Origin: Iphione sp. A-MEVVRFRX5
Lineage: Eukaryota
Direction of reading: 5' to 3'
Length of the DNA: 64,000 bases
Assembly (NCBI GenBank): GCA_976226885.1
Contig: OZ320319.1
Location: 29,884,001 to 29,948,000, forward strand
Of the stretch, positions 20,141 through 63,237 are shown piece by piece; within the stretch, counting starts at the first letter, position 1; every line of letters begins with the position of its first letter. The notes beneath the pieces were generated by a model. It was given only the letters and a program-made list of their open reading frames with translations. It made no database searches and was not told the DNA's origin. Both the position numbers and the translations under genes were made by a program.

Positions 20141-20154
20141 GTAACCATGGCAAC
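20141..20154. promoter_or_regulatory. RFX X-box motif
   Basis: GTAACCATGGCAAC is a near-palindromic match to both GTNRCC(N0-3)RGYAAC and GTHNYYATRRNAAC, about 1.56 kb upstream of the first identified tau exon. Confidence 0.5.
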
Positions 20155-21716: not shown

Positions 21717-22709
21717 GCACCAAGGTGGCGGACAGTGACTTGACAAATGGCAGTACAGATCTCATGACGAATGGTTCTCAAATAGGCGTGGCTTACTCGG
21801 GGGCTGCCGTGAATGGGAACATAGACGGTACGGTATCAGTAGGGGCTGTTCGCGGCACGGAGGGCTGTGGCACCTCGCCGCCAGGTGCTGCTGACGTCAG
21901 CAGCGAGTTTGACCCTTTGACCCCTGACCTAGTTTCACAATCGTCGAGCGTACCCTCCGAGGCGCCGCACACGCCGTCTTCAGCTGGGGCGCTCGTCGAC
22001 CTGGAGCAGATGGGCGATAATATACACGAAGCGTCGACAGCGTCGTTGACCCCCGCCTCACCGCCACACGACGGCTCCAGTAGCCTCGATGGGTATGAAG
22101 CCATGCCTGAATCGGCCGGTCTGGTCGAAACGTCGGCGGTTGCCGCAGCTGGCGGCTGGCCGGCCCCTACCAAGGAGGCAGTGACACTTTTCGGCGCCAC
22201 CGGTAACACCTTGGAGGAACTGGGCGTCTACGAAGCCCCACCTCCTCCTGCGTCCACCTGCGATGACTTGGTCTCCTTAGATGTGGGCAAAGACAGCGGA
22301 AAGCAGCCGCCTCAGAGCACCGACGATGCCGCTGCCGCCACGCATGCGCAGTCCAACGGCGCCATGGCGGCCCCTGGTGGCACACCTGAGTCGCCATCGA
22401 AGAAGTCGCGGGAGTCGAAACTGCCGAAAATCACGCCCCCGGCGTCACCCAAGAAGAAGACGGCGGCCGCTCCACCAGCAGAGGCGCCACTCTTCGAGAA
22501 GGTGCCGCTGCCGCCGGAACCGGAACCGAGCGGCGGGGCACGACCTAAGACTGCGCCCTCCTCCGCGACGAGCGCCTCACCCAAAACACCCAAGTCCACG
22601 AAACCAAAGGCGGCCGACAACGGGCGGCCTCAGTCGGCGCCCTCGGCAGGAAGCAAGATCCCTTCACCAAAGAAGGAGAGAACACCCGTGTCGACGCCAA
22701 AGAAACAAG
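21717..22709 (+). CDS. MAPT: host tau exon: acidic then Pro/Ala/Ser/Lys-rich projection and proline-rich region (phase 1-1, 993 nt)
   Basis: GC-rich 342-codon ORF. CTAAC branch site at 21694-98, acceptor TTTGTAG| at 21716, donor CAAG|GTGAGG at 22710. Many SP/TP motifs. The first in-frame ATG inside the exon is at 21764. Confidence 0.85.
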
Positions 22710-43700: not shown

Positions 43701-46700
43701 GTAATTTTGTGGTCAAACAATGAAAGAACGGCAGGATCAAACAGAGATATGTAAGCATTGAACAAAAACAGCAACAAACTCAGTGAAAAAAACTTTCCGA
43801 CATGTTTTTGCGCTTTACTTCGCAGGTCAGGCCGAAGAAAAGAAAATATGGTGCTTCGTATTTGTATTAAATATGCATCAACATAATGCTTTGTAGAACG
43901 GAAAGGAAATGTTCGTCTAATATGGTCTTATTTGTCAATCACCCACCTGCAGATTGAATCTCAGAAGTTGGCTTGGAATGTCCAGTCGAAAATCGGCTCA
44001 CTTGATAATGCAGCACACGTGGCAGGCGGTGGAGAGAAGAAGGTGTGATACTTTGTCAGTGTATAAAAGTGCATCTTATTCTAAAATTGACTGATTTCTG
44101 GAAGGAACAAGTTGTTGTCATTTTGTAGGTGCACTGTGAAGGAAATGAGAGTTCGTTACTGCTTCTTTCTCTTTGCAAACAGGAGCACGGATTGTGCTTC
44201 TCCATCCTCAAGCTTTTGCTATCTACTAATAGTAAGCTTATTTAGAGCAATATTTTTTGGGACCATGTGTAAGAATAAAAGTAAGAAATAAGATGATTGT
44301 AGGATAAGGGCTGTCCCCAAAGTATACTGACGTAATGAAAAGATTGTTAATTTCATGAAGCCTAATTATTTTGAGTTATTTTTATTCCTAGATCGAAAGC
44401 CACAAACTGAAATTCAGGGAGAAGGCTCAGGCTAAGGTCGGCTCGACAAAAAACATGACCCATCAGCCTGGTGGTGGAGAAAAGAAGGTAAGCAGAATGT
44501 TTTACATTATTTCAAAGTCTCATGCTCGTTCGCATTACGCTGTTAACACATGGCGTTGAAGACATAGTAAAAGGAGAGATAGAGAGAAGGTCACAATATG
44601 AGCGGTTTGATCCGTGTTGATTCATGATGAGAATGAGACAAATACAAAAGAACAAAATTTTCCATGAAACAAATGGAAAAGGGAAATTTGGAGTAGGTAT
44701 GTGTACCGCCAAACCCTAATTTTTATGCTGGGTCTCCATCTCCATCTGTGCATGTCTGGAAAATCAGCCGATTTTCTGGAAAAGCACAGAATCCAGAAAA
44801 AACCTGCACACATGGAAAGTAGGTCCAAGGCTAAATACCAAGGGCTCACACATCCAATGTGTTGTATTTCACATTTAAACCATGCCCCCACGAATTTGCA
44901 CTGGAGGCCTGACTACAGGTAACCTTTACTCGTCCATGCCTAAACAGCTGACGCTATGACAAGCAGTAAGACTAATGGTTCCATTTTATGTGAAAGTACA
45001 TTGTACGTGTCCGGGACAGGGCGTCCGACTATAGATGTACCCGAAACCACACATAGAGGTAGTAGAATAGGGACGTGTACTGGAAGGTGGAAATTTCAAA
45101 ATTTTTCTCATGATCAGTTTTCATAAGTGCTTCTCTGCTAACATTAAAAAATTATGAAAGTCATTTTTTGACATACTGCCCACGGACTAAATGCCCCCAG
45201 ATTCATGTGTAATTCTCTTTGATGCATATGTAATATAACATGCAGTATGTTTCTTCAACCAACGCCTTGAATCTAGAATGAGTCATTTTCCCTTGGGCTT
45301 TCGAACATGGAAATTTGAAGATATTTAATGCAATAAAAACAAGGTCCTTGCCTTCTGAAGATAGACAACTTCAGATATGTTGGTCATCAAAGTCAGAGTC
45401 TTGTTCGTGTTTCCAGCCTGTAATAATTGTAAATTTTACACATGCATCTACAGTAAATACTCAAAACTGACAAGCCTTGGTTCGAAGTAAAAGTGTCCAC
45501 ATTAAGGAGATCCCTCCAGTTTTTGATAATAAGTACTATGAATAGCAAAAGTATGATGCCGTTCTGGCCAAAGTTCCCCCATTCTAGCTATGTGCCCCAG
45601 TCGCAGGTTGGCTCAGTAAAGTTGCTCTACTGAATTCACACTGACGTTTTCCAACAGGTAATGACAGGTATTCTCAATTTGCTGGAGAGTGTTATATCCT
45701 GAGACGTTCTACTTATTTTCTTTCGGAACATTCAGTTTGCCTTTCCCGTCTTTATATACTTTCATTTTTTTACCCGGTGAAATGAACTAAATATAGATGT
45801 TCCTTTTGGATTTAATCATTCTTTTTATATACACGATTATGTGAACAGAGGTCCCTTTAAACCGCCAGGCGCTGATATAGGTGGTATTAAGGTGTTTAAT
45901 CCTAGTGGATACGACAAATCTGCATTAAATCACAGTTGGACATGGATTGATGCCAAGTTAATTTGAGTAAAGTGTCACCGTGAATAATCTGCTGCATGAG
46001 AACTTAGACCACAACTGAACTCTCGTCAATACGATTCTCACAATTAACAAGAATAGGCGTAGAAAAGACAAAACTACCCTTACCCAAACGCTATGTGGTA
46101 ATGAATTTTCAGGTATATTTCATAGGCAGGTTCAATGAACTACGGTCGATTCCTTTAGTTGGGTAATGTACATCATCCCAGTCGTCTATACGAGATTATT
46201 TTCCTTGGCTCTTAAGAGGCTTTTCTACACACATGGGCGTCATGTGTATTTTCCAACCTGTGCCAGCCTCATGGACGTGACCGCAGGAAAATTAAGCCTG
46301 TCAACACAGTTTGTAGCAACTGACCATATTTGGCACGAGGATCAGAGATTGTTCTTCGAGTTTACTACACCTAAGGATAGACAGACACTCAAGTTGACGT
46401 ACGTCTATCCGCCTGTTGGATTTAAACCACGCTCCACTTGATCACCCAGGAATAGATTTGACGATGCGTAGCTTCACATCGTGCCCAACCTTTATTCACT
46501 TGGCACCAAACCCTTTGCAGGTGTACGATAGACGGTATCGAATCTGGACAGTTTACTCAAACTGAACGAATCTTTCAAGCGCGTTACACACCTGTAACAA
46601 GTGCTGGAAAGGATCATTGATCACGGGCAGTTCGTGTATTGACATCGATAAAAACATAACGACATGTACATTTGTCAACTGTGATGAAAACGTTTTGGCA

Positions 46701-49700
46701 TACATCTATTTCTCATTGTCCTTAAAGGCTACTAAGAGGAGAAGAGGTCCAAGACGATATGGTTATATAGAGCCGATTATGCTCCATCTGTTGTTCTCAT
46801 GCAAATGCGATTGCATGAAGTTCGGCACACACCGCTAAACATGGGCTATTAGCCTCTCGAGGGGTTCTTGCTTAAGGACTACTGCTCAACATCGAACGTT
46901 AGCTTCACTACTGTATGCAATGGAGGAGGCAACAAGCCGGAAGGGTAATTGTAACAAAACCTGGACTAAGCTTGCCCTGCCTGTTGGTCTAAAACGGGAA
47001 GGCAACCTGCTACCGCTCCAGGAGAGGCTGTTCAAGCTCAATCAGCTTCAGTTGAGGAACCACGGCCGAAACAAGAGGTTTACTGCCTTTCACGAGGACG
47101 GCAGCTCTGTGGCGACGACCCGGCCGCAGGCCTCCGACCAGTGCTGAAGGCAAAGAGACTGTCGTAGCTTAAATAGTTAGCGATGGTGGAGGTGATACCG
47201 GGTCCTCTCTGGCGATTTGTCGCGCACATGTAGCGGCGTGTAGTTGAGGCATTGCTACATGTGGTTCAGTGGAGAGCCTCTTGTATACAGAAGGACTATT
47301 AGTTCAGTCAAAGCCACACGCCCAAGTGTGCATCTACGGCTGGACCTAGCTGACTCAGGCTCCCCGGAGGCAAACTCCTTATCATGACCTTCTGAAGTGA
47401 GTATCAAATGATTCAAACCTGAAATAACACCTGGCATGTTCTAAATGATTAACGCCGATACAATAGATAGCAGCGCTTCTGGATCCATGCTAGAAGAAAA
47501 TTGTTGATAATGTAGCCCGGACTTACATCTGAAATGTGACCATATGGAAACGTATTCCAAACTAGCTCTCCTCCATGAATACTTGCTCCCGGTATGGTGT
47601 GGTGGGTTGTTTCTAATACGGCTTCTTACATGGACACTGAATACTAATACTAATCAGTCAAGAAATCAAGCATACCGACTTTTGACGTTTGAGCATCTTG
47701 TGAGCATCTCGCTTACCTTGCGCTGACCCCATGCTTGCTACATCAATTAACTACTGCTTGGTATCCAAACAACACTGATTATCTGTCACCTGCTGCACTT
47801 CTGGCCTGTGGTAAATTCGGCAAGAAGTATGGGCGACCTGTTACATATAAATGACAAATATTGCATGGTCAGAAATATGTGAGCATCTCTTTCAAAATGA
47901 GCGAGAGAGTAGCATCAGCACTCAGTTTGGACGAGTTCGAGGAGGATGACGATGAAGATGACCAGTTTGACTACCTGCGACGGAAGAGTTGGCCAAGACC
48001 ACCGGATTACAAACATGTAAGAGCTCGTATTGGGTCGCTCAAGGATGCCAGCAGGCCAAGGCCAGGAGGGAATGTTAAGATTGTCAACCGCAGGCTAAGT
48101 TGGTCAAACCAGTCCAAAGTGGGCTCGCTGGATAATCTGCAACACAGGCCTGGAGGAGGTGATAAACCTATTGAAAACCATGTTCTCGCCTGGAGATCTG
48201 AACCTAGGATCGATGCTTTCAATCCTGACTATGTGCCCCGAGGTGGGGATATATATGTTTTAGACGAAAAGCCCAGGTGGAAGGCTGAAGCCGCAGTGGA
48301 TGCGAGAAATGATGGCTACAGACCCTCTGGCGGCAATGTTGCCATATACGATGAGACGCCAAAGTGGAGAGCAGGACCGAAAGTTGAAAGTGTAAATCCC
48401 ACTTATCAAAGGAAAGGTGGAAGTGTAAGCATTATAGATGAAAAACCAAAATGGAAAGCACAGCCAAAGGTAGAAACGCTAAACGTCAGCTATGCCCCAA
48501 AGGGAGGAAATGTTGTGATAGCAGATCAGAAGCTACACTGGAGGGCAGAACAGAAAGTAGATTCCAATAATCATGTTTATAAACCTGGTGGGGGGAATGT
48601 TGAAATTATAAATGAAAAACCAAAATGGAAAGCACTACCAAAAATAGAATCGAGAACAACACATGAGCCTAAGGGTGGTAATATTGAAATATTTTCAGAA
48701 ACTCCCAGATGGAAAGCATTACCCAAAATTGATACTGGCTCGACAGATTATAAACCCAAAGGAGGTGGTGTACAAATATTCAATGAAAAACAAATGTGGA
48801 AAGCAGCCCCTAAAATAGATGCAGGAGACAAGAACTACCAGCCTAAAGGTGGTGATGTGAAAATATTTGAAGAGACACCAAGATGGAATGCTGCTCCAAA
48901 AGTAGACGCTGGCGATAGAAACTATAAACCTAAAAAACAGGAAGTTCAGATCTTTAATGAAAGTATCAACTGGAAAGCTTCCCCCAGGATTGATGTTGGC
49001 GACCCAAATTACAAGCCAAGAGGTGGTCATGTAGAAATATTCACAGAGACACCAAGATGGAATGCTGCTCCAAAAGTAGACGCTGGCGATAGAAACTACA
49101 AACCTAAAAAACAGGAAGTTCAGATCTTTAATGAAAGTATCAACTGGAAAGCTTCCCCTAGGATTGATGTTGGCGACCCAAATTACAAGCCAAGAGGTGG
49201 TAATGTAGAAATATTCACAGAGACGCCAAAGTGGAAGGCAGCTCCAAAAGTAGACGCTGCTAACAGGACTTACAATCCACGTGGTGGTGACGTACAAATT
49301 TTCACAGAGACTCCTAAATGGAAGGTAAATCCCAAAATTGATGTGGACAACAAGAATTATAAACCAGGAGGAGGTGATGTCAAGATATTTACTGAAGCAG
49401 CGAAATGGAATGCTGCTCCAAAGATTGACGTAGGAAGCAAAGATTATCAGCCTAAGAAAGGAGATGTCAGAATCTTCAGTGAAGCCCCCAAGTGGGAAGC
49501 GACTCCTAGAATTGATGCCGGAAGCAAGGACTATACCCCTAGAGGAGGTGATGTGAAAATCTTCACCGAGGCACCAAAGTGGAACGCTGCCCCCAAAATT
49601 GACATTGGCAACGCAGATTATCAACCCAAAAAAGCAGACGTGAAAATATTTAGTGAAACTCCAAAATGGCAAGCAAATCCTAAGATCGATGTGGGTAATA

Positions 49701-52700
49701 ATGACTATACACCCAGAGGCGGTGATGTGAAGATCTTCACTGAAAAATTAGGGTGGCAGGCGTCACCACGTATTGATGCAGGTGACAAGAACTACGAACC
49801 CAAACGAGGAACTGTGCAAATCTTCTCTGAAAAGCCCAAGTGGGAGGCCAGTCCCCGGGTTGATGCAGGTGACAAACAGTATGAACCACGAAGAAGTGAA
49901 GTGAAAATATTTTCGAAAACACCGAAATGGGAGGCATCGCCTCGGACAGATCATGGCGACAAGTCTTATAAACCAGGCGGTGGGGAAGTAAAAATATTCA
50001 GCGAAAAGCCCAAATGGACCGCCACTCCAAGAATAGATAATCATGCTGACTACAAGCCACCAGAAAGTGAGGTAAAAATATTCAGTGAAAACCCCAAATG
50101 GAACGCCCCGGCTAAAATACATTTTGGGGAAGACAGTTATCAACCCCAAGGTGGTAAGGTAGAAATATTTGATGAAAGACCCAACTGGAAAAAAGAAGCC
50201 AAAATTGGATCCCTAGATAATATTTCTCACGTCCCCGCGGGTGGAAACCGCAAGGTTGAATCACAAAAACTAAATTGGCAAGCATCTTCTAAAATTGGAT
50301 CATTGGACAATATTCACCATGTTTCCCAGGGTGGTAATATTGAAATTGCGAATGAGAAATTAGACTGGAAAAAACAATCTAAAATCAATTCATTCGAGAA
50401 TTTAAACCGGAAACCACCTGGCGGGATGAAGAGCATTGAAAGTCACAGACTCAGCTGGAACAAAGCATCCAAGATAGGTTCTACATTGGACAAGAAATAC
50501 AAGTCTAGAGGTGGAAATGTTGAAATAAAATCTGAACCTGTACATTGGAATGCCAAGTCGAAGGTAGGGTCTTTGCTCAATGTGAAATGGGTACCGCCAG
50601 GTGGTGAGAAGAGTATAAAATCCCAAAAGTTAAAATGGAAAAAACAGTCGAACGTTGGATCAACTGTTGACCCTAATTATAAACCCAGAGGGGGCAACGT
50701 AAAAATTACATCTGAGAAGCTTACCTGGAAGGTATCAGCAAAAGTCGGTTCTTTGGAGAATGTCTCTTGGGTTCCGACTTCAAGTCGTAGAACAATAGAA
50801 TCAACTAAACTTAACTGGAAAGCCGCGCCCAAGATTGACACGATTCTAGAACCATCCAAAATACCGACTGAAAGAAAAGTGCACATACCTTCCCAGCAGG
50901 TACAGTGGAAGAAGGAATCTAAAGTGGGTTCGCTGGATAACGTCAAATGGAACCCACCTGTTAGTAAGGTTAAGATACACAACCAGAAGCCACACTGGGA
51001 TAAACAGTCCAAGATCGGTTCCCTTGACAACGTTCTTCACAATCCAGGAGGAGGGGATGTGATACTTCCCAAGAATGCCGTTAACTGGCGGAAGCAGTCG
51101 AAGCTAGGCTCAACGCGGAGTGGTGAGTACATGCCAGGTTATAAGAAACTTAAGGGGTCGTTATGCCCAGAATGGCATCGTCGTTAAGAGTGAAAAGCCC
51201 GTATGGCAAAGTGGTTTGACGATCGATCCCCTCACCAACATCTCTTATGTATGTCTAGCAGCATGCCCGTAGCCAAGGGGATATCTTTTGGTCTTTATGG
51301 GAATAGAAAAAAAAGTTCCACCCCTGTGGTATCAGTGGTATCGTCTGATACCCCCATAAAACTTCCTGGCTACGGGCCTGAGCAAGTAATGCAAAGGTAA
51401 TTGACGAGCGGTTGTCCTGGAGAGGGGAATCCAACGTGAGATCACTTGAAAATGTATACTAAGATGATTTTAAAAATGTAGTTTTGTTCCCGGTGGAGGA
51501 AATGGTACAATGTTAAAAACACAGAACGAAGTGGACTGACAGGTCGGAGATGGACTCATTCCAGAACAAAAAATATTATGGAGAAGTCAGTTAAGAAATT
51601 GCAAAGCCATCATGGAAGAAAAGTATCGAATTTTGGATCCCTTGAAAACTCTCATCATATTGCTGAATGTTCCCTGATGTGGAAATGAAGGATAAAAACC
51701 TTAAATGGCATGCACAATTAAAAATAAGGTCCCTAGAAAACAAAAACCGGAAAGCCTAAGAAACCTAGTGTGACAATTGAAAGCAGAAAAGCAAAAAACT
51801 CACGTCCAGTATATGCCAGCATAAGACAACAGTACTTGAGAAACTGAAGTATAAACCGAGGGAAAAATAAAACTTCTCGGAATATGAGATGAGATGAGAA
51901 ACGAGTGATAACGAACGAGAGGGACCATGTCGATCGCAATAAGCCTCCTGCTCTGAATGAAGAATCTGTCCAGAATAAGAGTGAGAAGGCAGGGCATCCT
52001 CCACGACCTAGAACCTTGAGAAATACACGTATGATAAAAAAGGCTCTTAAAGACAGCAGGCTTAACGTGAACGATCAGTCTTAGGCGGAGGCGTAACAGT
52101 GGACCATGGGTGTTGAGGCAATACAGACCTCATTAAACCTTTTTCAAACAGGAAACAGACCACAGCCGGTTCTGTAGGGTCATAACAGGGCCACTATGAG
52201 CGTTGGAAGCGTGAAACCAATGCCTTTTCACAACGAGGCGCCACTGGTTCAACGAGTCGGGGAAACGAAACACGAAAGGGAAACAAGAACAATGGCAGAA
52301 AACGGCGCCATCGGAATAATTTCACTCACAGCCTGTAGGGGGAACCAATGTGTCTCCTACGACAAAGCACAGCCGGCGACTTCCACCGTGTGGAGGCACA
52401 GTCGGACAAGTATCCAGCGATCAACACAATTGATGATGCCATCCAACGGCTATCAAGACACCCCCCCAATTTGGTTAATCTGGCGCTGAAGGATATCGGC
52501 GCCAGCTTCAAACAGCTGGGGACATGCTTCCAACCCTTACTAGAGGAAAGGCCTATACCAGACCATTTTTTTCTGCTTATCGAACAATATATTCCGAGTG
52601 CTTAAAAATTCTTAGGTGAATGTAAACCTGAGGATAGTGAATATCTAAGTATGGAAACCATCATGACTAAGTTACAGAAATAGTGTAAAATGCTTTTGTA

Positions 52701-55700
52701 TATGTAGAAATTGAATTCATGCATAATTGCAAATTATGTAAATTATAAAGGAAAAAATATAATAGTTGTAGAGACACATTCTACTAGATTTTGTTACCAT
52801 ATTTCGCTCCTTAGGGTGACGCATTTACTGCATAAACCTACATGTGTAACGCAGAGACTACACTGGGATTTTCCTTGTACGTTCAGTCTCATGATCTTGT
52901 TATCAAAGATAATTTTCGTCATTTAAATACTTATCTCAACTTAAAATACGGGTTAAACCGAGAGCCTGTGTAAAATAAGTGTAATGAATGTATGCAGGGC
53001 TATTTGTGACTTAAATTTGTATCATAGATAGAACAATGCATGAACTTTTGACGTACTTGGTTGAAAATGCGCATGCAAGTTGTGATTCATCCCCCCGCTT
53101 TCTTTGGACTCGGACGAGATTTGGATCACTTTACCTGATTTTAAAGTTTAATTCAGGCAGAGCCAAGTTCTTTGTAGCATGTATACAATACGGACGTTAA
53201 TAACTCGGTCTAATCGTGTCCTGTTTGCACACCGGGGACCCTCATGTTGGTCCTTCGCACGTCCTTTACCTTTAATGGCCCTTGTTGAAGGAAGCACTGC
53301 ATATGTAATCCCTGCATGGCTTCTAGTAGATGACCAAAGGTAGTTCTCGAGAAGTGCTCGACGATCCTTTAATCAAATGTGTGCTGTAGGATGTGAGTAC
53401 GCCCGAAGGTGTTCTCTAAATACAACAACAAAAAAACAGCACAGAAATACAGCAATGACCATGCAACACATGCCCCCTTTGCTTTAAGTACTGCAATCGG
53501 ATGTTGAGCTATATCTCTGTCCCCTAAGAACGTTAATAAGATGGATGTTCATGTCTGTCTCGAAACAGTTAACAAGAGATTCAAGTAAAGTTAGTTTATA
53601 TGACTATACTGACTATGCATATTTTGCCACAGTTACACGTTCTTACGTACTGTTATGTAGACATCGCATTGCTGCTTCGTAAAGAGTTTGCATTTGGGCA
53701 GTGTTACTATTGTGCCGAAGGATCATTCGCACTGAAATAAACAAAGGTTAGCATTTAGCCAACGGACACGTAGTCGTCAGTCAACACTGTCCTAATCTGT
53801 ACCTATACACCAAACATACAATCATTTACAGAAAGGCCCTGCCCCATAACTGCTCTATGCTGGACCTATTATTTCTTATGCAACACTTGTAGAGCAATAC
53901 ACCCTACAGAGACACACAACATGACCACACCACCCTGGAGCTTTTTGGTGTGAGAACATGCTCGTGCTTTTGTAAGCCTGGCCCTTAATGAATACAAAGG
54001 TATACATGGCGTCTAATTAGGAGCATAAGTGTAAGGTTTTTTTTTCTGAAGGAAACGAGTATGCGCACATACTGGCGAATTCGTAAGGTCTTTGCCGAGG
54101 TCTAGATATAGGTGTGTGCCCCGGAGTGTACGTGTGTAAGTAGACGCTCATGTTTCACCAGTAGGGGCCCCGTCTATTCACATTGGCCCTCGTCCAGGGT
54201 ACACAGTATTACGGTCGGGACACCGCTGACCACCCCCTCATTACTGGGAGGTCGACCACGTACGAGACGTTGGGTGTCTTGCAGCATGGCCTCGCCTCCA
54301 GTGGAGGACGGACCCGACCAGCACCTTTCAAGACGGACTTGGCGGCCCACTCACATCCTCAGAGGGACAAGACGTACAGCCTGGAACTGTCCATATTGGT
54401 CTTGTTATAAGACACATAGTCTCTGGCATGCTGAGAAGCTTTGCACAATCCGTTTGGTGAAGGTGTTAATGGTTGAACTGAATATGTAGAACTCCGATCG
54501 CTTTGTTTCGCAACACACATTCATGTAGCCCTACATAATGGATGGCATACCTAACCACCATCTACTTTGAAGGAAACTAAGTTGAAATTGATGAGCCATG
54601 GAGGAAGACTCAGTTTCGGTCAGTTTAGAGCCGATCCCTCTTTCGTCACTGGGGCCAAATTTATCCGGACACAAGATGTCTGAAGAAAGCGCAGGCAACG
54701 AGGAGGACAGGGACAGCGATGTGAAATCCATGTCCTTTCAAGCTGAAGATGTAGATACAACGCCCGAGGGACATATTGACGCAGAATCGACAAACACGTT
54801 GACAGACTCTCTTCCTGGCGAATCTACCGCACCTGCTTTGGATACTGGAGTCTTTGCTGATCAAAATAAGGATAACAATTCCCCGATTGAAATATCGTCT
54901 GCCGCGTTGGATCCGCCAATGGAGATCCAGGAAGTTGTTTGCTCAGACGGTGTTCATGGATCGCCAGTTCCCATTAGTAGTAAAGTGATCAACTCATCTA
55001 CAGATATGGCACAAGACGTCCCACAAGAATGTCTTCATGAGGATGCAGACGACGGATTATTGCACGGTAAAGAGGAATCACCAGTCGTAATACCAGAGGA
55101 TGCGAATAGCACTACGACTACGGAAACAGTCACAGCAAATATGGACGACACTGGGGGCGCCCGTGAAACGGGTGGTATAAGCAAAGGCGATCATCAAACG
55201 GAGGAAGCGCATGTCGCCTGTCCTAACAATAGCGGTGACGAAGAAAATAGCGTGTGTTTGAATTTAGAAAGAAAAGACGATCTACTTGAGTTAGAACCAG
55301 AGAGCAAGCAAGATCAAGGGTCAGAAGGGAACTTGAATGGGTTTAATCTCCGTAAAGCAGTTGCACTGGAGAATCTATCCGACAATGAGTCAGATTTAGA
55401 GTCAGAGTCAAATTCTAATGTTGATGACTCCATTGACGATTTGCTTCCTCCTCTAGATAATGAGACACCAAACGACACCACTACTGTAAAAGACACCGAG
55501 AGTAATCCAGGGCAAGCTGAAAATAACAATGTCAGTGCAGATGAAGTGCAGTCAAGCATCGAGCCGACGGAAAGGACTGTAAACACTGAGATCCAAAATG
55601 ATAACCAAGTGCTGACTGATGGAGGTGATATGCAGGAAGGATCGGACAGCTCAGATGAACCAGAATTTGAGTGTGAGTCATTCCGGCATCTGAACAGTCT

Positions 55701-58700
55701 TCTAAAGGACGAAGAGGATACGAATGAGTATTTTGCTGCAGGCGCTCATGTTGATCCTAATTATCTTGGAGATGCTTGTGAGATACCAATGGTTATTGAC
55801 TATAAGCCACAATTTGGTGAAGGTCCTCTACTGGGGGACAGTAGGTATAGTCCGGATGGTTTAGCCAGGAAACCAGTTAGGTCGTTACGTACAGACAACG
55901 ATAAGCTTGCCAATAGGTCTACCCCAGAATCCAACCTAACAGTCCATGCACAACAATATAACAAGCCTAAGGTGAATCCGTTGGTCAACGGGAGTTCTAA
56001 ATTAAAAATGAATAGTTTGCTGACAGCCGATAAGAATTTGGACAAGCATGAGGAGGCTAAACCCGGTTCTTTAGAGAATTTAGAGCATTTGCCAACGAAA
56101 TCAAATAAAAAGATATTTAACAGCCTTCCTAAGTGGAAAAAACAATCAAAAATCGCTTCCTTGGAGAATATTGGACATGAACCCCCCCAAAGTAAGGTGA
56201 AAATCTTTGATCAACCCATATCCTGGAGTGCCCAGTCGCGCCTTGGTTCTCTGGATAATCTTTCACACGTCCCAGGAGGTGGTCATGTGGAACTTCCCAG
56301 ACAGGAAGTAAAGTGGAGGTCTGAGCCCAAGGTAGGCTCACTCGAAACACTTAGGAAAATGAAGGATATTGAGAGGAGTTTGCCTGAAAAGATGGATTCC
56401 ATCGCTGAGGAAGACGAAGTACATTTGGGAGATAGTTCAAATGATCAGCGATCTGGTGGACCATACAATGTGAACGTACCAAAGTATGTCCTGAACAAAA
56501 GAAACAGAACCAAGAAACCCTTAAGGTTTGTGGGTGTCTTCCACGAACGGTTGAACTGGAAAGGGCAGGCTAAGGTTGGTTCTTTAGATAACATACACTA
56601 TAAGCCTGGCGGAGGAGACGTCATTGTTGAGGAGGAGGAGGAAAACCAGAAAGTGGAGGCCAAGTCTACAGTAGGCTCGCTGGATAACATCGACCATGTG
56701 CCAGGTGGAGGTACCGTACAGTTACCCCGGAACAAAGTCAATTGGAATAAGAAGAGCAAGGTTGGGTCGCTACGGAGTATGTTCGAAATAAACGAAGACA
56801 AGAAGGTAGTTCTCCAAAAGTTTGGGATTAACTGGGATGCTTTCCCTGAGCATCTGCGCCCACGACGTGAGGCCTGTGATATCGATATACAGACCAGCTC
56901 AGGACTGCGGAAATCTGAGCAGAGTGTAGTCTCCAAGACTGACATAGATGACCGTGCTGTGTTCAATCCTGTAGACCAGTGGTTCAAAGACTACAAACAG
57001 AAACGTGTTTCTCGGCGAGAGATGTTTAAGGCTATCGATAAGGAGCTGGAAGATTCTGTTCGGTTTTCCTCCCATTCGAAACATTTAGGACTCGGTGACG
57101 CGCGAATCAGTGGTAGGAGGAACAGGAAGGTAAGACCCCTGCGAGCTGAAGGTGGTCCGGATGAGCAGACGTTGAGCAGGTATACTCGACCTGAGACCCC
57201 AGTCGTCGAGCGGTCCGACGTCCAGGTACAAGGACATGGTTCACCTGAGCTCGCCAAGAATCTCAGAGGGAGCGACACCACATCAACCGTGCCCAGTGAA
57301 CCTTCAACAATTGAACCTCCGTCACTGCATTCAATAACAGAGGAAAAACCTGACTTGGCCGTCTCGGGACTGAAAGCTCCATACTTGGTGCGAGCCAAAA
57401 TGGATGGCGGGGACAGCACCCAAGCTGTAGGTAATGACCTTGTGACTATGCCAAGTAAAAGGGCCAAGACCCACACAAAGCTAGTGCCAGTTGAGATGCC
57501 CGAGGCTGCGCGAGACCAGCTGGGTCTGGACAGTGCCAAAAAGAAACCCAAAGCAAAGATTCGCTCGATTGGTAACACGGACATCATTCCTGGGATCAAC
57601 GACCACCTTCGTATTAATAACGAGAAACTTCGCTGGAAGGCTAAGCCCAAGGTGGGGTCGTTGGACAATGTTAACCACAGTCCCGGTGGAGGTTTCAAGG
57701 CCGTATACAACGAAGGGCTGTCCTGGAATGCCGAGTCCAAGGTGGACGCCGGCTCGGGCCCTCGTGTAGTGCGGGAGGGAACATATGACGTTATAAAGAC
57801 CAGCCCTGAGAAGTAGACTATGGGTGCTTATCATAACCCTGCTTTCATATGGACTTTTCAACGTAGTGCGTGTATACATGCAAATCTAGTTTGGGATTAT
57901 TTCGTTCATCTGTTTTTTTTTCTAGGAGAGTTGGTAATAATTTATCAAGGAAACATTGCAAGTATCAAACGTCGAACCAACCATATCGAGACCCAAAGCA
58001 TTTGGCATAAATGGAAATGAATAGGAACACCATGGTGTTAGTAAAAAAAAGTATCAGTTATTTGTCCACCCTGCATATTTTCCTCGTAGTTTCATAAGGA
58101 AACAACAAAATACAGTACTTGCTGGCATATTGATCCTCGTGTGAGGCACTGCTCGTATACAATACCTTTGTGTGCTTCGTGTCGATTTTCTTCTTTATCC
58201 GATACTCATAGATAATAAATTCGCCAATGATTATTTGCATTGTTTGATTAGCTTTTTCTTGTCCTAATTTACAGTTTTATTGGTTTTGAACTTTGGATAA
58301 TATTCATATCGTGACAGGAAGGTTTTCATTACAGTGTACGTAAAGAAATTGTTGAATCAAAACTGAAAAGCTTCGGCTGACTATTGTTATGAAAAGGGAA
58401 ATCGTCTCAATATAATTAAATAATGTCGCACAAGAGATGAGATTTCCTGACATCCCATGCCTGGACGTGGGACAAATAGAACTCATTTTCTAAGAGAGTC
58501 TTTAGCAGCTCTCTCCATGTTTAGACAGTTTAGACATTTAGACAATCTTATTTCTGAGGAGGATAAGGACAAATTTTGTACAGGGCTCAGATCTTTTGGA
58601 ATGCAATACATGGGATGATAAGTGTGTATTTAATATATCCTTTTTTAAACACATGCTCTGAGTAATAATCAGAGATTTAAAAGTTGGCAACATATTAGGA

Positions 58701-61700: not shown

Positions 61701-63237
61701 ATAAAATGGTCGCATAGAATTTATAAGGTATTTCATTTTGTAACTTGTAGTTTAGCCATATGTTTCAGGACATGTTCCCGCTTATGAAAACAAAAACAAA
61801 AAACATGTTAGGTATAAGGATAAAAGCTGAACTCAAGTTCCTTTGGCTGTTTTCCATATACATTGTACATGTACATGTCAACGTGCACATTGAGATATAT
61901 CTGTTATATCTAGAACAACCCAAGACTATATACTTTGTATCAGGTTTCTACTAATGTCTCTATAGATATCGCACATGTGTCCTTAGCTTTGAAGGCTATC
62001 CAGATTGGATGGATTGTCCCGCTTACAGATCCGTGAAAGCCATAGATTTAAACCAACCTGGACATTTAGTGGTTATCTGATAGTCAACCGGGGTCAATTA
62101 GTGTCATGCAAATCCATCTGTTCCAGACTAAATGGATATGTCTCTGTGTGCATGATAATGTATACAATGGAACACCGCCCTAATATCTTGCTACTTGGAT
62201 GCCATAGACCCTGTTTATCATTATGAGTTTAACTGTGATGAAGAAACGTCGGACTTGCAACATATGAGCAACAATGCTACCTTCAAGAGAAGAGGGTAGA
62301 CTGGCCTTTTTCTCAGCGACCAGCGAGGAGTTTAGTTTCTCTCAGGCATGCCCGTTACACCTACATTTACTTTAAAGGTTGTGAGGCGCTTTAGTATAAC
62401 TAGTATTCACATAGTATATCATTGTGCCTATATTTCCTCATAAATTATTGAACAGACAAGTCTGCGTCAAATAGAAACGGTTTTAGAATGCACGTGTAGG
62501 TGCTGCTTCAGTTTTGATTTAAAAGATGTCACAGATGGACAAATATTTGAGCCCTGATTTCTATACCTTGTCCTTTAACCGTTCTCTAGCTGGGGTGCGT
62601 CAAGTTGTGGACTATGGGGCTTATGACCTCTTGAACATATTTTTTCCAGCATACACTCGTTCTTTATGGTTAATCTGTGCCCTCCTCCCCACCTCCCCGG
62701 TGTAATTAGGCGGTCTTTCCATGTGTACAACTTTTTGTGATGTGGGGTTGGAGTGTAGGAAGTCCTAACACCCCGCCAGTGGTGACACTGCGGAACATAC
62801 ATTGTATGTACATATGGACAGGGTGCGGGTAGATTTACGCGTGTACTGATCCGCACTGTCCTGCACGATCCTGCAGATGAATCCATAGTTGTCTGGTAGG
62901 TTCATCTATCAGTTCATTATTTGGTTTCACCTACGGTCCTTGCTCCGCGTCCGGAGCTGGAGAAATCGTGCACATGGAAAGACAGCCTAGCCGACCTGGA
63001 TCAACCCTGCACTGCCATGCCAGCAACTCAACTTCAGTTGAATGTACAGTAGTTCTGCAGTCTTCAATTAACTGGTCATTTTGTCATATTTTCCAGATTG
63101 AGAGCCACAAGCTGCACTTCCGTGAGAAGGCCCAAGCCCGGACGAATCATGGAACTCGCACTACCGGCTCTGACTCGATCGGCTCCGGGGAGGCTGCCGA
63201 GTCCATCAGCTCGGCAGACGGGGCAGCAAGCACATGA
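21717..63237 (+). CDS. MAPT: tau/MAP2/MAP4-family microtubule-associated protein (host gene, multi-exon; 5' end unresolved)
   Basis: 13 exons with AG/GT boundaries and matching phases total 2204 nt, which with the 1 nt from the upstream exon gives 735 codons including the stop. The product has nine K/R-x-G-S...(P)GGG repeats and a terminal [19 protein letters not shown] matching vertebrate tau IETHKLTFRENAKAKTDHG. The symbol denotes family membership, not one-to-one orthology. Confidence 0.9.
24171..24214 (+). CDS. MAPT: host tau 44-nt linker exon (D)[14 protein letters not shown] (phase 1-0)
   Basis: Acceptor TTTTCTTTCACCAG|, donor CAAG|GTAAGG. It bridges the phase-1 donor at 22709 to the downstream phase-0 acceptors. 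Confidence 0.75.
28966..29214 (+). CDS. candidate alternative exon of the tau host ([22 protein letters not shown]...), boundaries uncertain
   Basis: C-rich acceptor ...CCCGCATGCAG| in phase 0; 37 of the first 47 codons end in G/C; phase-0 donor GGACAG|GTGCGA at 29215. It could instead start at ATG 28960 or run to TGA 29280. Confidence 0.4.
31245..31511 (+). CDS. candidate alternative first coding exon, Lys/Arg-rich ([15 protein letters not shown]...TKPRR)
   Basis: ACAATGG start and a strongly basic reading frame; phase-0 donor CGG|GTAAGA at 31512 is compatible with the phase-0 acceptors at 32020 and 35087. Confidence 0.45.
32020..32685 (+). CDS. candidate alternative acidic exon of the tau host (phase 0-0, 666 nt)
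   Basis: 233-codon open frame, D/E/S/T-rich and disorder-like. Acceptor TCCTCTTTGTTACATGTTAAG|, phase-0 donor ACA|GTAAGA at 32686. It could also initiate at ATG 31996. Confidence 0.6.
35087..35258 (+). CDS. MAPT: host tau 'pre-repeat' exon [57 protein letters not shown] (phase 0-1)
   Basis: Acceptor TTACTCTCAAATAG|, perfect donor |GTAAGT at 35259, and a tau-like [10 protein letters not shown] motif. Confidence 0.85.
36166..36501. mobile_element. PIF/Harbinger (Tourist-like) MITE, 336 bp, copy 1
   Basis: TIRs ...AAAATAGGTGTGTTTCTG / CAGAAACACATCTATTTTTTTTGCC with a TAA target duplication at 36163-65 and 36502-04. Collinear with 60817-61152. Confidence 0.85.
37208..37326 (+). CDS. MAPT: host tau R1-like exon (P)[39 protein letters not shown] (phase 1-0)
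   Basis: Acceptor TCTGTCCTGCTTGTGTAG|, donor CAA|GTAAGT; canonical SKIGS..N..H.PGGG. Confidence 0.92.
37604..37702 (+). CDS. MAPT: host tau R2-like exon [33 protein letters not shown] (99 nt, phase 0-0)
   Basis: Acceptor TTTTATCGTAG|, donor AAG|GTAATT; aligns with human [30 protein letters not shown]. Confidence 0.93.
38292..38381 (+). CDS. MAPT: host tau 90-nt repeat exon 1: [30 protein letters not shown]
   Basis: AACAG| acceptor, AAG|GTATCA donor, phase 0-0. Confidence 0.9.
40322..40411 (+). CDS. MAPT: host tau 90-nt repeat exon 2: [30 protein letters not shown]
   Basis: TTCATGTAG| acceptor, AAG|GTAACA donor, phase 0-0. Confidence 0.92.
40821..41116 (+). mobile_element. tRNA-headed SINE-like repeat (not a functional tRNA)
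   Basis: Head GGGGATTTAGCTCAGTTGGTAAGAG contains an A-box; degenerate B-box GGTTTAATCC; the body is shared with 12564-12806 on the opposite strand. No intact acceptor stem seen. Confidence 0.7.
41546..41635 (+). CDS. MAPT: host tau 90-nt repeat exon 3: [30 protein letters not shown]
   Basis: TTTGTGTAG| acceptor, AAG|GTAACA donor, phase 0-0. Confidence 0.9.
41915..42004 (+). CDS. MAPT: host tau 90-nt repeat exon 4: [30 protein letters not shown]
   Basis: GCCAG| acceptor (weak pyrimidine tract), AAG|GTACCA donor, phase 0-0; the most divergent of the six. Confidence 0.82.
43265..43354 (+). CDS. MAPT: host tau 90-nt repeat exon 5: [30 protein letters not shown]
   Basis: AATCTAG| acceptor, AAG|GTAATC donor, phase 0-0. 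Confidence 0.92.
43953..44042 (+). CDS. MAPT: host tau 90-nt repeat exon 6: [30 protein letters not shown]
   Basis: CCCACCTGCAG| acceptor, AAG|GTGTGA donor, phase 0-0. Confidence 0.9.
44392..44487 (+). CDS. MAPT: host tau 96-nt repeat exon: [32 protein letters not shown]
   Basis: TTTTTATTCCTAG| acceptor, AAG|GTAAGC donor, phase 0-0. Confidence 0.92.
47846..47851 (+). promoter_or_regulatory. candidate TATA box for nested ORF-A
   Basis: TATAAA about 50 nt upstream of the CAAAATG start at 47897. Motif only. Confidence 0.3.
47897..51187 (+). CDS. nested intronless ORF-A: about 36 tandem tau-like repeats (1096 aa from ATG 47897)
   Basis: Uninterrupted 3.3-kb frame. Short acidic N-terminus, then an R1-like [28 protein letters not shown], then 35 Trp-anchored 28-30-aa units. 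Nine units carry KxGS. In-frame stop upstream at 47852-54. Confidence 0.88.
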   Translation: MSERVASALSLDEFEEDDDEDDQFDYLRRKSWPRPPDYKHVRARIGSLKDASRPRPGGNVKIVNRRLSWSNQSKVGSLDNLQHRPGGGDKPIENHVLAWRSEPRIDAFNPDYVPRGGDIYVLDEKPRWKAEAAVDARNDGYRPSGGNVAIYDETPKWRAGPKVESVNPTYQRKGGSVSIIDEKPKWKAQPKVETLNVSYAPKGGNVVIADQKLHWRAEQKVDSNNHVYKPGGGNVEIINEKPKWKALPKIESRTTHEPKGGNIEIFSETPRWKALPKIDTGSTDYKPKGGGVQIFNEKQMWKAAPKIDAGDKNYQPKGGDVKIFEETPRWNAAPKVDAGDRNYKPKKQEVQIFNESINWKASPRIDVGDPNYKPRGGHVEIFTETPRWNAAPKVDAGDRNYKPKKQEVQIFNESINWKASPRIDVGDPNYKPRGGNVEIFTETPKWKAAPKVDAANRTYNPRGGDVQIFTETPKWKVNPKIDVDNKNYKPGGGDVKIFTEAAKWNAAPKIDVGSKDYQPKKGDVRIFSEAPKWEATPRIDAGSKDYTPRGGDVKIFTEAPKWNAAPKIDIGNADYQPKKADVKIFSETPKWQANPKIDVGNNDYTPRGGDVKIFTEKLGWQASPRIDAGDKNYEPKRGTVQIFSEKPKWEASPRVDAGDKQYEPRRSEVKIFSKTPKWEASPRTDHGDKSYKPGGGEVKIFSEKPKWTATPRIDNHADYKPPESEVKIFSENPKWNAPAKIHFGEDSYQPQGGKVEIFDERPNWKKEAKIGSLDNISHVPAGGNRKVESQKLNWQASSKIGSLDNIHHVSQGGNIEIANEKLDWKKQSKINSFENLNRKPPGGMKSIESHRLSWNKASKIGSTLDKKYKSRGGNVEIKSEPVHWNAKSKVGSLLNVKWVPPGGEKSIKSQKLKWKKQSNVGSTVDPNYKPRGGNVKITSEKLTWKVSAKVGSLENVSWVPTSSRRTIESTKLNWKAAPKIDTILEPSKIPTERKVHIPSQQVQWKKESKVGSLDNVKWNPPVSKVKIHNQKPHWDKQSKIGSLDNVLHNPGGGDVILPKNAVNWRKQSKLGSTRSGEYMPGYKKLKGSLCPEWHRR
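48871..49218 (+). repeat. near-identical 174-bp (two-repeat, 58-codon) tandem duplication inside ORF-A
   Basis: 48871-49044 and 49045-49218 differ at only a few positions (e.g. TAT/TAC, CCC/CCT, CAT/AAT). Confidence 0.92.
51150..51800 (+). pseudogene. frameshifted, decayed tau-like repeats downstream of ORF-A
   Basis: Fragments in shifting frames: [83 protein letters not shown] (51676-51759) and [10 protein letters not shown]. Confidence 0.65.
54598..57816 (+). CDS. nested intronless ORF-B: acidic N-terminal domain plus about 10 tau-like repeats in three clusters (1072 aa)
   Basis: GCCATGG Kozak start with an in-frame TGA 6 nt upstream. Repeats such as [32 protein letters not shown] and [16 protein letters not shown] fall at about 56044-56350, 56540-56775 and 57540-57765. 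Confidence 0.88.
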   Translation: MEEDSVSVSLEPIPLSSLGPNLSGHKMSEESAGNEEDRDSDVKSMSFQAEDVDTTPEGHIDAESTNTLTDSLPGESTAPALDTGVFADQNKDNNSPIEISSAALDPPMEIQEVVCSDGVHGSPVPISSKVINSSTDMAQDVPQECLHEDADDGLLHGKEESPVVIPEDANSTTTTETVTANMDDTGGARETGGISKGDHQTEEAHVACPNNSGDEENSVCLNLERKDDLLELEPESKQDQGSEGNLNGFNLRKAVALENLSDNESDLESESNSNVDDSIDDLLPPLDNETPNDTTTVKDTESNPGQAENNNVSADEVQSSIEPTERTVNTEIQNDNQVLTDGGDMQEGSDSSDEPEFECESFRHLNSLLKDEEDTNEYFAAGAHVDPNYLGDACEIPMVIDYKPQFGEGPLLGDSRYSPDGLARKPVRSLRTDNDKLANRSTPESNLTVHAQQYNKPKVNPLVNGSSKLKMNSLLTADKNLDKHEEAKPGSLENLEHLPTKSNKKIFNSLPKWKKQSKIASLENIGHEPPQSKVKIFDQPISWSAQSRLGSLDNLSHVPGGGHVELPRQEVKWRSEPKVGSLETLRKMKDIERSLPEKMDSIAEEDEVHLGDSSNDQRSGGPYNVNVPKYVLNKRNRTKKPLRFVGVFHERLNWKGQAKVGSLDNIHYKPGGGDVIVEEEEENQKVEAKSTVGSLDNIDHVPGGGTVQLPRNKVNWNKKSKVGSLRSMFEINEDKKVVLQKFGINWDAFPEHLRPRREACDIDIQTSSGLRKSEQSVVSKTDIDDRAVFNPVDQWFKDYKQKRVSRREMFKAIDKELEDSVRFSSHSKHLGLGDARISGRRNRKVRPLRAEGGPDEQTLSRYTRPETPVVERSDVQVQGHGSPELAKNLRGSDTTSTVPSEPSTIEPPSLHSITEEKPDLAVSGLKAPYLVRAKMDGGDSTQAVGNDLVTMPSKRAKTHTKLVPVEMPEAARDQLGLDSAKKKPKAKIRSIGNTDIIPGINDHLRINNEKLRWKAKPKVGSLDNVNHSPGGGFKAVYNEGLSWNAESKVDAGSGPRVVREGTYDVIKTSPEK
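58214..58219 (+). terminator. candidate polyadenylation signal for ORF-B
   Basis: AATAAA about 400 nt after the stop, followed by T-rich sequence. Motif only. Confidence 0.3.
59450..60410 (-). mobile_element. degenerate 5'-truncated non-LTR retrotransposon (CR1/L2-like) RT remnant
   Basis: Minus-strand fragments in shifting frames: [11 protein letters not shown] (~60340-60365), [30 protein letters not shown] and [14 protein letters not shown]. Confidence 0.8.
60817..61152. mobile_element. PIF/Harbinger (Tourist-like) MITE, 336 bp, copy 2
   Basis: TIRs GGCAAAAAAAATAGGTGTGTTTCTGGTAA / TTACCAGAAACACCTATGTTTTTGGCC with a TTA target duplication at 60814-16 and 61153-55. Homologous to 36166-36501. 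Confidence 0.85.
63097..63237 (+). CDS. MAPT: host tau terminal exon [46 protein letters not shown]
   Basis: Acceptor TTGTCATATTTTCCAG| in phase 0; the N-terminal part matches vertebrate MAPT exon 13 (IETHKLTFRENAKAKTDHG). Confidence 0.9.
   Translation: MESHKLHFREKAQARTNHGTRTTGSDSIGSGEAAESISSADGAAST

What the first reader, a model, noticed from the sequence alone, without database searches (positions are those of the whole stretch)
44488..63096. Tau genes nested inside a tau gene: two intronless tau-repeat ORFs in the host's last intron
Seen: the host's penultimate exon ends at 44487 and its exon-13-like terminal exon starts at 63097. The 18.6-kb interval holds two same-strand, uninterrupted frames of about 3.2-3.3 kb, both encoding tau-type repeats. 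ORF-B has an in-frame stop 6 nt before its ATG, so it cannot be joined in frame to the host's phase-0 donor. Established: vertebrate MAPT/MAP2/MAP4 carry at most a handful of repeats, and I know of no intron-nested same-family paralogues. Inference: this is a three-gene MAP system, or a host with giant alternative terminal exons, producing very different microtubule binders from one locus.
Basis: partly seen in the sequence, partly recalled or inferred. Interest (0 to 1): 0.92.

Follow-up and report, generated by a model that had tools for sequence, protein, structure and literature searches.

The report
Tau-like genes nested in tau-like gene
The last intron of an invertebrate (mollusc-type) tau/MAP2-family gene holds two large intronless tau-repeat genes and a small conserved reading frame on the same strand. 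The layout is kept in other species, so it is a real, selected gene cluster, but its transcripts have not been seen.

Summary
The host's penultimate exon ends at 44487 (phase 0, GTAAGC). Its terminal exon starts at 63097 behind a strong acceptor.

The 18.6-kb intron holds:
- ORF-A (47897-51187, 1096 aa, about 36 tau-type repeats);
- ORF-B (54598-57816, 1072 aa, acidic N-terminal half plus three repeat clusters).

Both hit Pfam PF00418 (1.5e-83 and 3.3e-49).

- The order [quoted passage not shown] recurs in an unrelated public assembly. There the proteins are only 44-48% identical and synonymous sites are saturated.
- Parts of the order recur in two more assemblies.
- In Haliotis asinina, RefSeq annotates a 389-aa intronless "tau-like" gene inside the last intron of the tau-like host.
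- Two haplotypes of the other species give dN/dS of about 0.32-0.34.

ORF-B is closed by an in-frame stop just before its ATG in both species. Separate nested genes therefore fit better than alternative terminal exons.

The host looks molluscan, not cephalochordate. No transcript data could be reached.

Verdict: a real, conserved and largely undescribed arrangement, and a new variant of known kinds.

The parts
35087..35258 (+). Host 'pre-repeat' exon ([22 protein letters not shown]...). It is the same unit type as the 29-aa repeat amplified in ORF-A.
   Evidence: AG/GT flanks. tblastn to scallop and abalone tau-like proteins. The motif is found only in molluscs among session proteins. tblastx matches to ORF-A-like repeats of the other species.
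37604..44042 (+). Array of host one-repeat cassette exons: 37604-37702, 38292-38381, 40322-40411, 41546-41635, 41915-42004, 43265-43354, 43953-44042. Most are 90 nt and phase 0-0. A further repeat exon ends at 37326; its 5' edge was not fixed.
   Evidence: Each is flanked by AG and GT. tblastn to mollusc tau-like proteins.
44392..44487 (+). Host penultimate exon (32 aa), phase-0 donor GTAAGC.
   Evidence: The orthologous exon in the other species is 67% identical.
44488..63096 (+). Host last intron (18.6 kb) carrying the nested coding units.
   Evidence: Bounded by the donor at 44487 and the acceptor before 63097. The equivalent intron is about 26.7 kb in the other species and about 12.5 kb in Haliotis asinina.
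46920..47147 (+). Conserved small ORF (75 aa), about 750 nt upstream of the ORF-A ATG. Family and role unknown. It could be an upstream cistron of the ORF-A transcript or a separate micro-gene.
   Evidence: 67% identity over 49 aa to a 78-aa ORF at the same relative place in the other species. pN 0.21 with saturated pS. It is the only block conserved at DNA level in the intronic spacers. A 78-aa ORF also precedes the ORF-A-like frame in a third assembly. No Pfam or Atlas hit. AlphaFold2 gives one helix at low confidence.
47897..51187 (+). ORF-A: intronless, 1096 aa. It has a short acidic N-terminus and about 36 tau-type repeats. The central 23 are a 29-aa variant lacking the KxGS serine; canonical 30-aa repeats sit at both ends.
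   Evidence: 48% identical over 1046 aa to a 1504-aa orthologue. An internal recent 174-nt duplication shows 4 synonymous and 2 non-synonymous differences.
51382..51747 (+). Decayed tau-type repeats with stops and frame breaks, just after the ORF-A stop. They are the remnant of a longer C-terminal repeat array kept in the orthologue.
   Evidence: tblastn of the orthologue's C-terminal repeats, E 2.7e-7, with stops in the match.
54598..57816 (+). ORF-B: intronless, 1072 aa. It has an acidic N-terminal half, three separated clusters of tau repeats (about 7-8 units) and a conserved non-repeat C-terminal tail with its own stop.
   Evidence: Orthologues are P0027 (E 4e-160), P0012 and P0121 (alignment). 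The C-terminal tail and internal motifs are shared.
63097..63237 (+). Host terminal coding exon (46 aa plus TGA), of the tau exon-13 type.
   Evidence: The same exon type closes annotated mollusc and vertebrate proteins. It lies downstream of the ORF-B orthologue in two other assemblies.

Best explanation
The interval is the last intron of a mollusc-type MAP2/tau/MAP4-family gene. That gene's microtubule-binding domain is built from about ten one-repeat cassette exons.

An old, selected cluster of independent same-strand coding units sits inside the intron:
- a 75-aa small ORF;
- ORF-A, a protein made almost wholly of about 36 tau-type repeats with no projection domain;
- ORF-B, a MAP2-like protein with a long acidic projection domain, three repeat clusters and its own conserved C-terminal tail.

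Each large ORF is read from its own ATG to its own stop, most likely from transcripts that start and end inside the intron. The host splices across them from 44487 to 63097.

Shown here: the coding capacity, the family membership, the conserved order in other species, and purifying selection.

Inferred:
- Transcription is independent.
- Both proteins bind along microtubule protofilaments as tau repeats do.
- ORF-A could span some tens of tubulin dimers. Its central repeats replace the KxGS serine with K-I-D-x-G, so they would escape MARK-type phosphoregulation.
- The small ORF and ORF-A share a transcript.
For: Family and anatomy:
- PF00418 hits at 1.5e-83 and 3.3e-49.
- Repeat register of ORF-A.
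- The only solved-structure relatives of the variant repeats are tau.

Conserved nesting:
- In ENA ERZ25767047 ctg39007 the host exons, including the orthologue of 44392-44487, are followed by a 78-aa sORF, a 1504-aa ORF-A orthologue and a 1337-aa ORF-B orthologue. The host terminal exon comes next, all on one strand.
- In NCBI GCA_022702875.1 an ORF-B-like frame lies about 850 nt upstream of a host-type terminal exon.
- In ENA ERZ26222911 the ORF map shows frames of 78, 670 and 869 aa in the same order.
- In Haliotis asinina a 389-aa intronless tau-like gene (XP_067685815.1) is annotated as its own gene inside the host's last intron.

Selection:
- Across species pS is at least 0.8 (saturated) against pN of 0.32-0.35.
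- Between haplotypes dN/dS is 0.316 (ORF-B type, 1335 codons) and 0.341 (ORF-A type, 635 codons), with no frame breaks.
- In the window the sequence after the ORF-A stop has decayed while 3.3 kb upstream stayed open.

Own starts and stops:
- An in-frame stop lies 1 codon (window) or 3 codons (other species) before the first ATG of ORF-B, and the window ATG has a GCCATGG context.
- There is no similarity upstream of the ORF-A ATG between species.
- The ORF-B C-terminal tail is conserved up to its own stop.

Splice sites: the host acceptor at 63097 is strong, while the candidate at 47873 lacks a pyrimidine tract.
Against: - No RNA evidence of any kind could be reached for this genome or its relatives, so promoters, poly(A) sites and splice junctions inside the intron are unknown.
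- A phase-0 AG at 47873 would allow an in-frame join of the host to ORF-A in the window.
- Several upstream ATGs precede the ORF-A start.
- ORF-A has lost part of its C-terminal array, so relaxed constraint on part of it is possible.
- dN/dS of about 0.3 between haplotypes is only moderate.
- The window's ORFs are not in the 15-billion-protein collection, so nobody has annotated them.
- The homology of the Haliotis nested gene to ORF-A or ORF-B specifically is weak (27-34% identity).
Confidence: 0.7

Rival explanations
1. This is one complex locus. ORF-A and/or ORF-B are giant alternative 3'-terminal exons, or alternative-promoter isoforms that still use host exons, so the products are host isoforms rather than products of separate genes.
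For: - Same strand as the host.
- The host donor at 44487 is phase 0, and an AG at 47871-47872 opens ORF-A's frame in phase 0.
- Large alternative exons are known in this family (Big tau exon 4a, PMC9755724).
- A non-coding host 5' exon could in principle be spliced to the ORFs.
Against: - ORF-B is closed by an in-frame stop directly before its ATG in two species.
- The peptide between 47873 and the ORF-A ATG is not conserved, and the site has no pyrimidine tract.
- RefSeq models the Haliotis nested gene as a separate single-exon gene, not as one of the host's 12 isoforms.
- No annotated tau-family protein among the hits joins host exons to an ORF-A or ORF-B type body.
Confidence: 0.2
2. The ORFs are non-functional relics. 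They would be old retrocopies or duplicated repeat arrays of the host that happen to remain open.
For: - Both are intronless whereas the host repeats are split one per exon.
- ORF-A is followed by decayed repeats.
- The ORFs are absent from protein databases.
Against: - Frames of 3.2-4.5 kb are intact in species with saturated synonymous divergence and in both haplotypes.
- pN is far below pS.
- Four ORF-B relatives share non-repeat motifs; three of them also share the C-terminal tail.
Confidence: 0.05
3. The small ORF and ORF-A form one transcription unit in which the 75-aa frame acts as a conserved peptide-coding upstream ORF. It would gate ORF-A translation, or be co-produced with ORF-A from a bicistronic mRNA.
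For: - The sORF precedes the ORF-A type frame by 0.5-1 kb on the same strand in three assemblies.
- There is no AATAAA or ATTAAA between the sORF stop and ORF-A.
- The sORF is the only conserved block in the spacers.
- Both sORF ATGs have A at -3 and G at +4.
Against: - Adjacency alone does not show a shared transcript.
- Haliotis has a nested gene but no detectable sORF.
- No family or structure could be assigned.
Confidence: 0.35

Closest known systems
MAP2/tau/MAP4 family (Pfam PF00418 tubulin-binding repeat), including mollusc members with 7-10 repeats (PMC8985376)
   Same: ORF-A, ORF-B and the host all carry the K-x-G-S-x-x-N-x-x-H-x-P-G-G-G type repeat of 30-31 residues. The host has the family's usual layout and C-terminal exon.
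   Different: ORF-A has about 36 repeats (about 48 in the orthologue) and no projection or proline-rich domain. Most of its repeats are a 29-aa variant without the KxGS serine. ORF-B splits its repeats into three clusters and ends in a non-repeat tail found only in four unannotated relatives.
RefSeq 'microtubule-associated protein tau-like' of Haliotis (XP_067685815.1, XP_046580165.1, XP_071104097.1)
   Same: It is an intronless tau-repeat gene on the same strand inside the last intron of the tau-like host. It shares the G-G-x-V-x-(L/I/M)-P-x5-W unit with ORF-A and ORF-B; the host repeats lack that unit.
   Different: It is a single gene of 389 aa with about 6 repeats. It has no ORF-A-type array, no ORF-B-type tail and no sORF. 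Identity to ORF-A and ORF-B is only 27-34%.
Brachionus plicatilis 'microtubule-associated 4 isoform X13' (P0001) and metagenomic P0007
   Same: They are arrays of the same 29-aa variant unit (V/I-D-x-x-N-x-x-Y-x-x-x-G-G-x-V-x-I/V-F) as the centre of ORF-A.
   Different: The rotifer gene has introns after most repeats and is not visibly nested in a tau-like host within 31 kb. Orthology to ORF-A is not shown.
Nested intronic genes in general, e.g. saitohin (STH) in a human MAPT intron (from my own knowledge)
   Same: An intronless protein-coding unit lies inside an intron of a tau-family gene.
   Different: STH is unrelated in sequence to tau and restricted to primates. Here the nested units are paralogues of the host and are conserved across deeply diverged species.

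Membership tests
MAP2/tau/MAP4 family | Tandem tubulin-binding repeats matching Pfam PF00418 above the gathering score | tested here: met
   ORF-A 274.7 bits, ORF-B 164.9 bits, against a cut-off of 27.
MAP2/tau/MAP4 family | KxGS motif with a phosphorylatable serine in each repeat | tested here: not met
   It is met in the host, in ORF-B and in the flanking repeats of ORF-A. The central 23 repeats of ORF-A read K-I/V-D/E-x-G instead.
MAP2/tau/MAP4 family | N-terminal projection domain, then a proline-rich region, then C-terminal repeats and the IE-x-HKL-x-F...HG tail exon | tested here: inconclusive
   The host meets it. ORF-B has an acidic N-terminal half but a different tail. ORF-A has neither.
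MAP2/tau/MAP4 family | Binding to and stabilisation of microtubules | not testable with these tools
   This needs a biochemical or cell assay.
Nested (intronic) gene | Lies wholly inside an intron of a host gene whose flanking exons are spliced together | tested here: met
   The splice sites are present. Annotated relatives carry the same penultimate-to-terminal exon join in their proteins. The same exon order occurs in other species. The junction itself was not seen in RNA.
Nested (intronic) gene | Own promoter and poly(A) site, with transcripts independent of the host | not testable with these tools
   The only evidence is indirect. There are stops before the ORF-B ATG. AATAAA or ATTAAA sites follow both stops. 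RefSeq models the Haliotis counterpart as a separate gene.
Retrogene | Intronless copy of a gene that has introns | tested here: met
   ORF-A and ORF-B are uninterrupted, while the host repeats are one per exon.
Retrogene | Poly(A) remnant and target-site duplications at the insertion | not tested
   These were not looked for. They are not expected to survive at this age, since synonymous sites are saturated. The spacers show no conserved DNA.

The most novel reading that the evidence does not exclude
The intron carries an ancient, co-inherited 'MAP cassette' of three cistrons whose expression is coupled to, or exclusive with, host transcription. The sORF would be a regulatory or partner peptide. 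ORF-A would be a 36-48-repeat binder that spans some tens of tubulin dimers along one protofilament and is blind to KxGS kinases. ORF-B would be a spacer MAP with three separated binding clusters. One locus would then switch a cell between very different microtubule coats. ORF-A would be the longest tau-type repeat array known and a natural tool for asking how repeat number sets lattice binding.
Probability: 0.2. Interest if true: 0.75.

Novelty: new variant of a known kind. Interest (0 to 1): 0.55.

Why it matters
The tau/MAP2/MAP4 family is studied almost only through vertebrate proteins with 3-5 repeats. The published maximum I found is 10 repeats, in an oyster.

A selected protein made of 36-48 repeats, most lacking the regulatory serine, would be a natural test of how repeat number and KxGS phosphorylation set microtubule binding.

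The conserved same-strand nesting of paralogues in the host's last intron, with a conserved micro-ORF, is also a clean case for studying how nested genes and their hosts share or compete for transcription.

It further shows that annotation pipelines miss such genes. None of the ORF-A or ORF-B orthologues found here carries a name.

Tried and rejected
- A default word search with ORF-B found nothing because its first 500 residues are low-complexity acidic sequence. The exhaustive search solved this.
- The word-index search with the orthologue's ORF-A did not return that protein itself. I walked along the contig through small called ORFs instead.
- Exact look-ups of the window's ORFs are not in the collection.
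- Look-ups of the Pecten and Nucella host genes are not on record.
- The locus of P0012 has no DNA.
- The CpG observed/expected profile gave no clear promoter islands.
- Spacer DNA shows no conserved non-coding blocks apart from the sORF.
- The sORF has no Pfam hit and no Atlas hit, and AlphaFold2 gives one helix at pLDDT 61, so no fold search was made.
- There is no second sORF copy before ORF-B and none in Haliotis.
- Assembly and run accessions were not found in the paper library.
- The antisense frames 48719-49672 and 56991-57740 were treated as by-products of repeat coding sequence and not pursued.
- A cephalochordate origin was rejected on the mollusc-only pre-repeat motif.

Full report
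**Observation**

The window holds a tau/MAP2/MAP4-type gene on the + strand. Its repeat domain is built from one-repeat exons, each flanked by AG and GT and mostly 90 nt in phase 0-0:
- 37604-37702
- 38292-38381
- 40322-40411
- 41546-41635
- 41915-42004
- 43265-43354
- 43953-44042
- 44392-44487

They are preceded by a "pre-repeat" exon at 35087-35258.

The exon 44392-44487 ends in phase 0 before GTAAGC. At 63097, behind a pyrimidine tract and CAG, an exon reads [19 protein letters not shown] and runs to a TGA at 63235-63237. The proteins of annotated scallops, clams, abalones and vertebrates end in exactly this exon type, directly after a repeat of the 44392-44487 type. The 63097 exon therefore belongs to this host, and 44488-63096 is its last intron.

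Inside the intron only two + strand frames exceed 150 aa.
- ORF-A runs from ATG 47897 to 51187 and encodes 1096 aa.
- ORF-B runs from 54598 to 57816 and encodes 1072 aa.
- Both match Pfam PF00418, at 1.5e-83 and 3.3e-49.

ORF-A has a short acidic N-terminus and then 36 units in a Trp-anchored register. The central 23 units are 29 residues long and read W-x-A-x-P-K-I-D-x-G-x-x-x-Y-x-P-x-G-G-x-V-x-I-F-x-E-x-P-K. They lack the KxGS serine. Canonical 30-residue repeats sit at both ends.

ORF-B has an acidic N-terminal half of about 480 aa, three separated repeat clusters, and a non-repeat tail. It starts at GCCATGG, with an in-frame TGA one codon upstream.

**Conservation of the nesting**

An exhaustive HMMER search with ORF-B found three full-length relatives, a shorter fourth (P0122) and otherwise only generic tau-repeat matches:

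| Relative | Length | E-value | Identity |
|---|---|---|---|
| P0027 | 1337 aa | 4e-160 | 46% |
| P0012 | 869 aa | 1e-102 | 42% |
| P0121 | 1001 aa | 2e-99 | 36% |

P0027 and P0012 share the ORF-B C-terminal tail and all of its internal non-repeat motifs. P0121 has a more diverged tail and shares only the NPVDxW motif. None of the three has a name.

I fetched the DNA around P0027 (ENA ERZ25767047, contig ctg39007) and walked upstream. On one strand it gives, in order:
1. host repeat exons, including a 67%-identical orthologue of 44392-44487;
2. a 78-aa ORF;
3. a 1504-aa uninterrupted ORF-A orthologue, 48% identical over 1046 aa, with the same N-terminus and the same 29-aa units followed by canonical repeats;
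4. the 1337-aa uninterrupted ORF-B orthologue, 44% identical over its conserved half;
5. 3.6 kb further on, IETHKVDFRDKAQARTKHG..., the host terminal exon.

Partial versions occur elsewhere.
- An NCBI assembly (GCA_022702875.1) has a short ORF-B-like frame about 850 nt upstream of a host-type terminal exon.
- For P0012 only the ORF map is available. It shows frames of 78, 670 and 869 aa in the same order and on the same strand.
- In Haliotis asinina the annotated tau-like gene has its penultimate exon at about 58.8 kb of locus L011 and its terminal exon at about 71.4 kb. Between them, on the same strand, lies a separately annotated single-exon gene of 389 aa with about six tau repeats.

The Haliotis gene is RefSeq XP_067685815.1, "microtubule-associated protein tau-like". 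It has orthologues at 90% identity or more in H. rubra and H. cracherodii.

A unit G-G-x-V-x-(L/I/M)-P-x5-W occurs in ORF-A, in ORF-B, in their orthologues (except the short P0122) and in the Haliotis nested gene. It does not occur in the host. This hints that the nested genes share an origin.

**Selection**

Between the window and the other species, synonymous sites are saturated (pS 0.81-0.82). pN is 0.32-0.35 for ORF-A and ORF-B.

A second contig of the same sample behaves as the other haplotype, with 92-96% DNA identity. Against it:
- dN/dS is 0.316 over 1335 codons of the ORF-B type;
- dN/dS is 0.341 over 635 codons of the ORF-A type;
- neither frame is broken.

In the window, the 400 nt after the ORF-A stop still match the orthologue's extra C-terminal repeats, but they carry stops and shifts. 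So sequence outside the frame decays while 3.3 kb of frame stayed open.

**Separate genes or alternative exons**

For ORF-B, the frame is closed 1 codon (window) or 3 codons (other species) before the first ATG. Its tail is conserved up to its own stop.

For ORF-A, an AG at 47871-47872 would allow a phase-0 join to the host. However, that site has no pyrimidine tract. The 8 codons between it and the ATG have no counterpart in the other species, where similarity begins after the ATG.

RefSeq models the Haliotis counterpart as its own gene, beside twelve host isoforms that differ by steps of 15 or 30 residues, the latter one repeat long.

I therefore favour independent nested genes (0.7) over alternative terminal exons (0.2). 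No RNA data could be reached, so this remains inference.

**A third conserved unit**

A tblastx comparison of the two introns showed one more conserved block. It is a 75-aa ORF at 46920-47147, about 750 nt before the ORF-A ATG. It is 67% identical over 49 aa to the 78-aa ORF at the same relative place in the other species.
- pN is 0.21 and pS is saturated.
- Both ATGs have A at -3 and G at +4.
- It is the only block conserved at DNA level in the spacers.
- It is intact in both haplotypes.
- It has no Pfam or Atlas match, and its model is a single low-confidence helix.

It may be an upstream cistron of the ORF-A transcript.

**Taxon**

The host's best named matches are:
- Nucella, 59%;
- Littorina, 63% (partial);
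- unionid mussels, 54%;
- scallops, 53-55%;
- a nemertean, 55%.

Its pre-repeat motif KKYGID...Y.P.GG occurs only in molluscs among about 300 tau-family proteins fetched. A mollusc or close relative is likely. The species is not known to me.

**Mechanism (inferred)**

Tau repeats bind in extended form along a protofilament. Tau is the only solved relative of the ORF-A repeats.
- ORF-A would be a very long lattice binder with no projection domain. Its central units could not be switched off at KxGS.
- ORF-B would be a projection-bearing MAP with three spaced binding clusters.

**Comparison with what is known**

Published surveys report at most 7-10 repeats, in molluscs (PMC8985376), and do not mention nested paralogues.

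The 29-aa unit also forms arrays in a rotifer protein auto-named MAP4 and in a metagenomic ORF. The rotifer gene has introns and no visible host.

This is a new variant of known kinds (tau-family MAPs and nested genes). A simpler form is already present, unremarked, in the RefSeq annotation of abalones.

Noticed in passing
window 46920-47147 (+); L006 10001-10237: A conserved 75/78-aa small ORF with a near-invariant core ([31 protein letters not shown]) and no known family. It lies upstream of the ORF-A type gene in three assemblies.
   Followed up: partly
window 51382-51747 (+): Decayed tau repeats with stops lie after the ORF-A stop. The orthologue keeps about 400 more residues of canonical repeats there.
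   Followed up: yes
window 48770-49422 (+): A recent tandem duplication of a 174-nt (two-repeat) unit inside ORF-A, 2.8-3.8 copies at 78-87% identity. The array is still changing in length.
   Followed up: partly
window 1603-2118 (+): A reverse-transcriptase fragment of a LINE-like element lies upstream of the host gene.
   Followed up: no
window 21707-22735 and 31996-32697 (+): Two large open exon-like frames. The first is Pro/Ser/Ala-rich and ends in a K/P/S/T-rich stretch; the second is acidic. They probably encode the host's projection and proline-rich regions. The first has high GC (0.56) and CpG o/e of about 1.
   Followed up: no
session proteins P0058, P0068, P0082, P0127, P0134, P0135, P0137, P0141, P0144, P0159, P0241: Eleven further unnamed tau-repeat proteins of 257-663 aa carry the G-G-x-V-x-(L/I/M/V)-P-x5-W unit typical of the nested genes. 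The nested-type paralogue may be more widespread than shown here.
   Followed up: no
L008 (Brachionus plicatilis REGN01003097.1) 10001-21021: The rotifer gene with ORF-A-type 29-aa repeats has introns right after G-G-x-V-x in most repeats, so each repeat sits on one exon as in the host of this window.
   Followed up: partly
window 4207-4362: A run of 156 N beside a (CT/GA)n simple repeat. It was left as it is.
   Followed up: no
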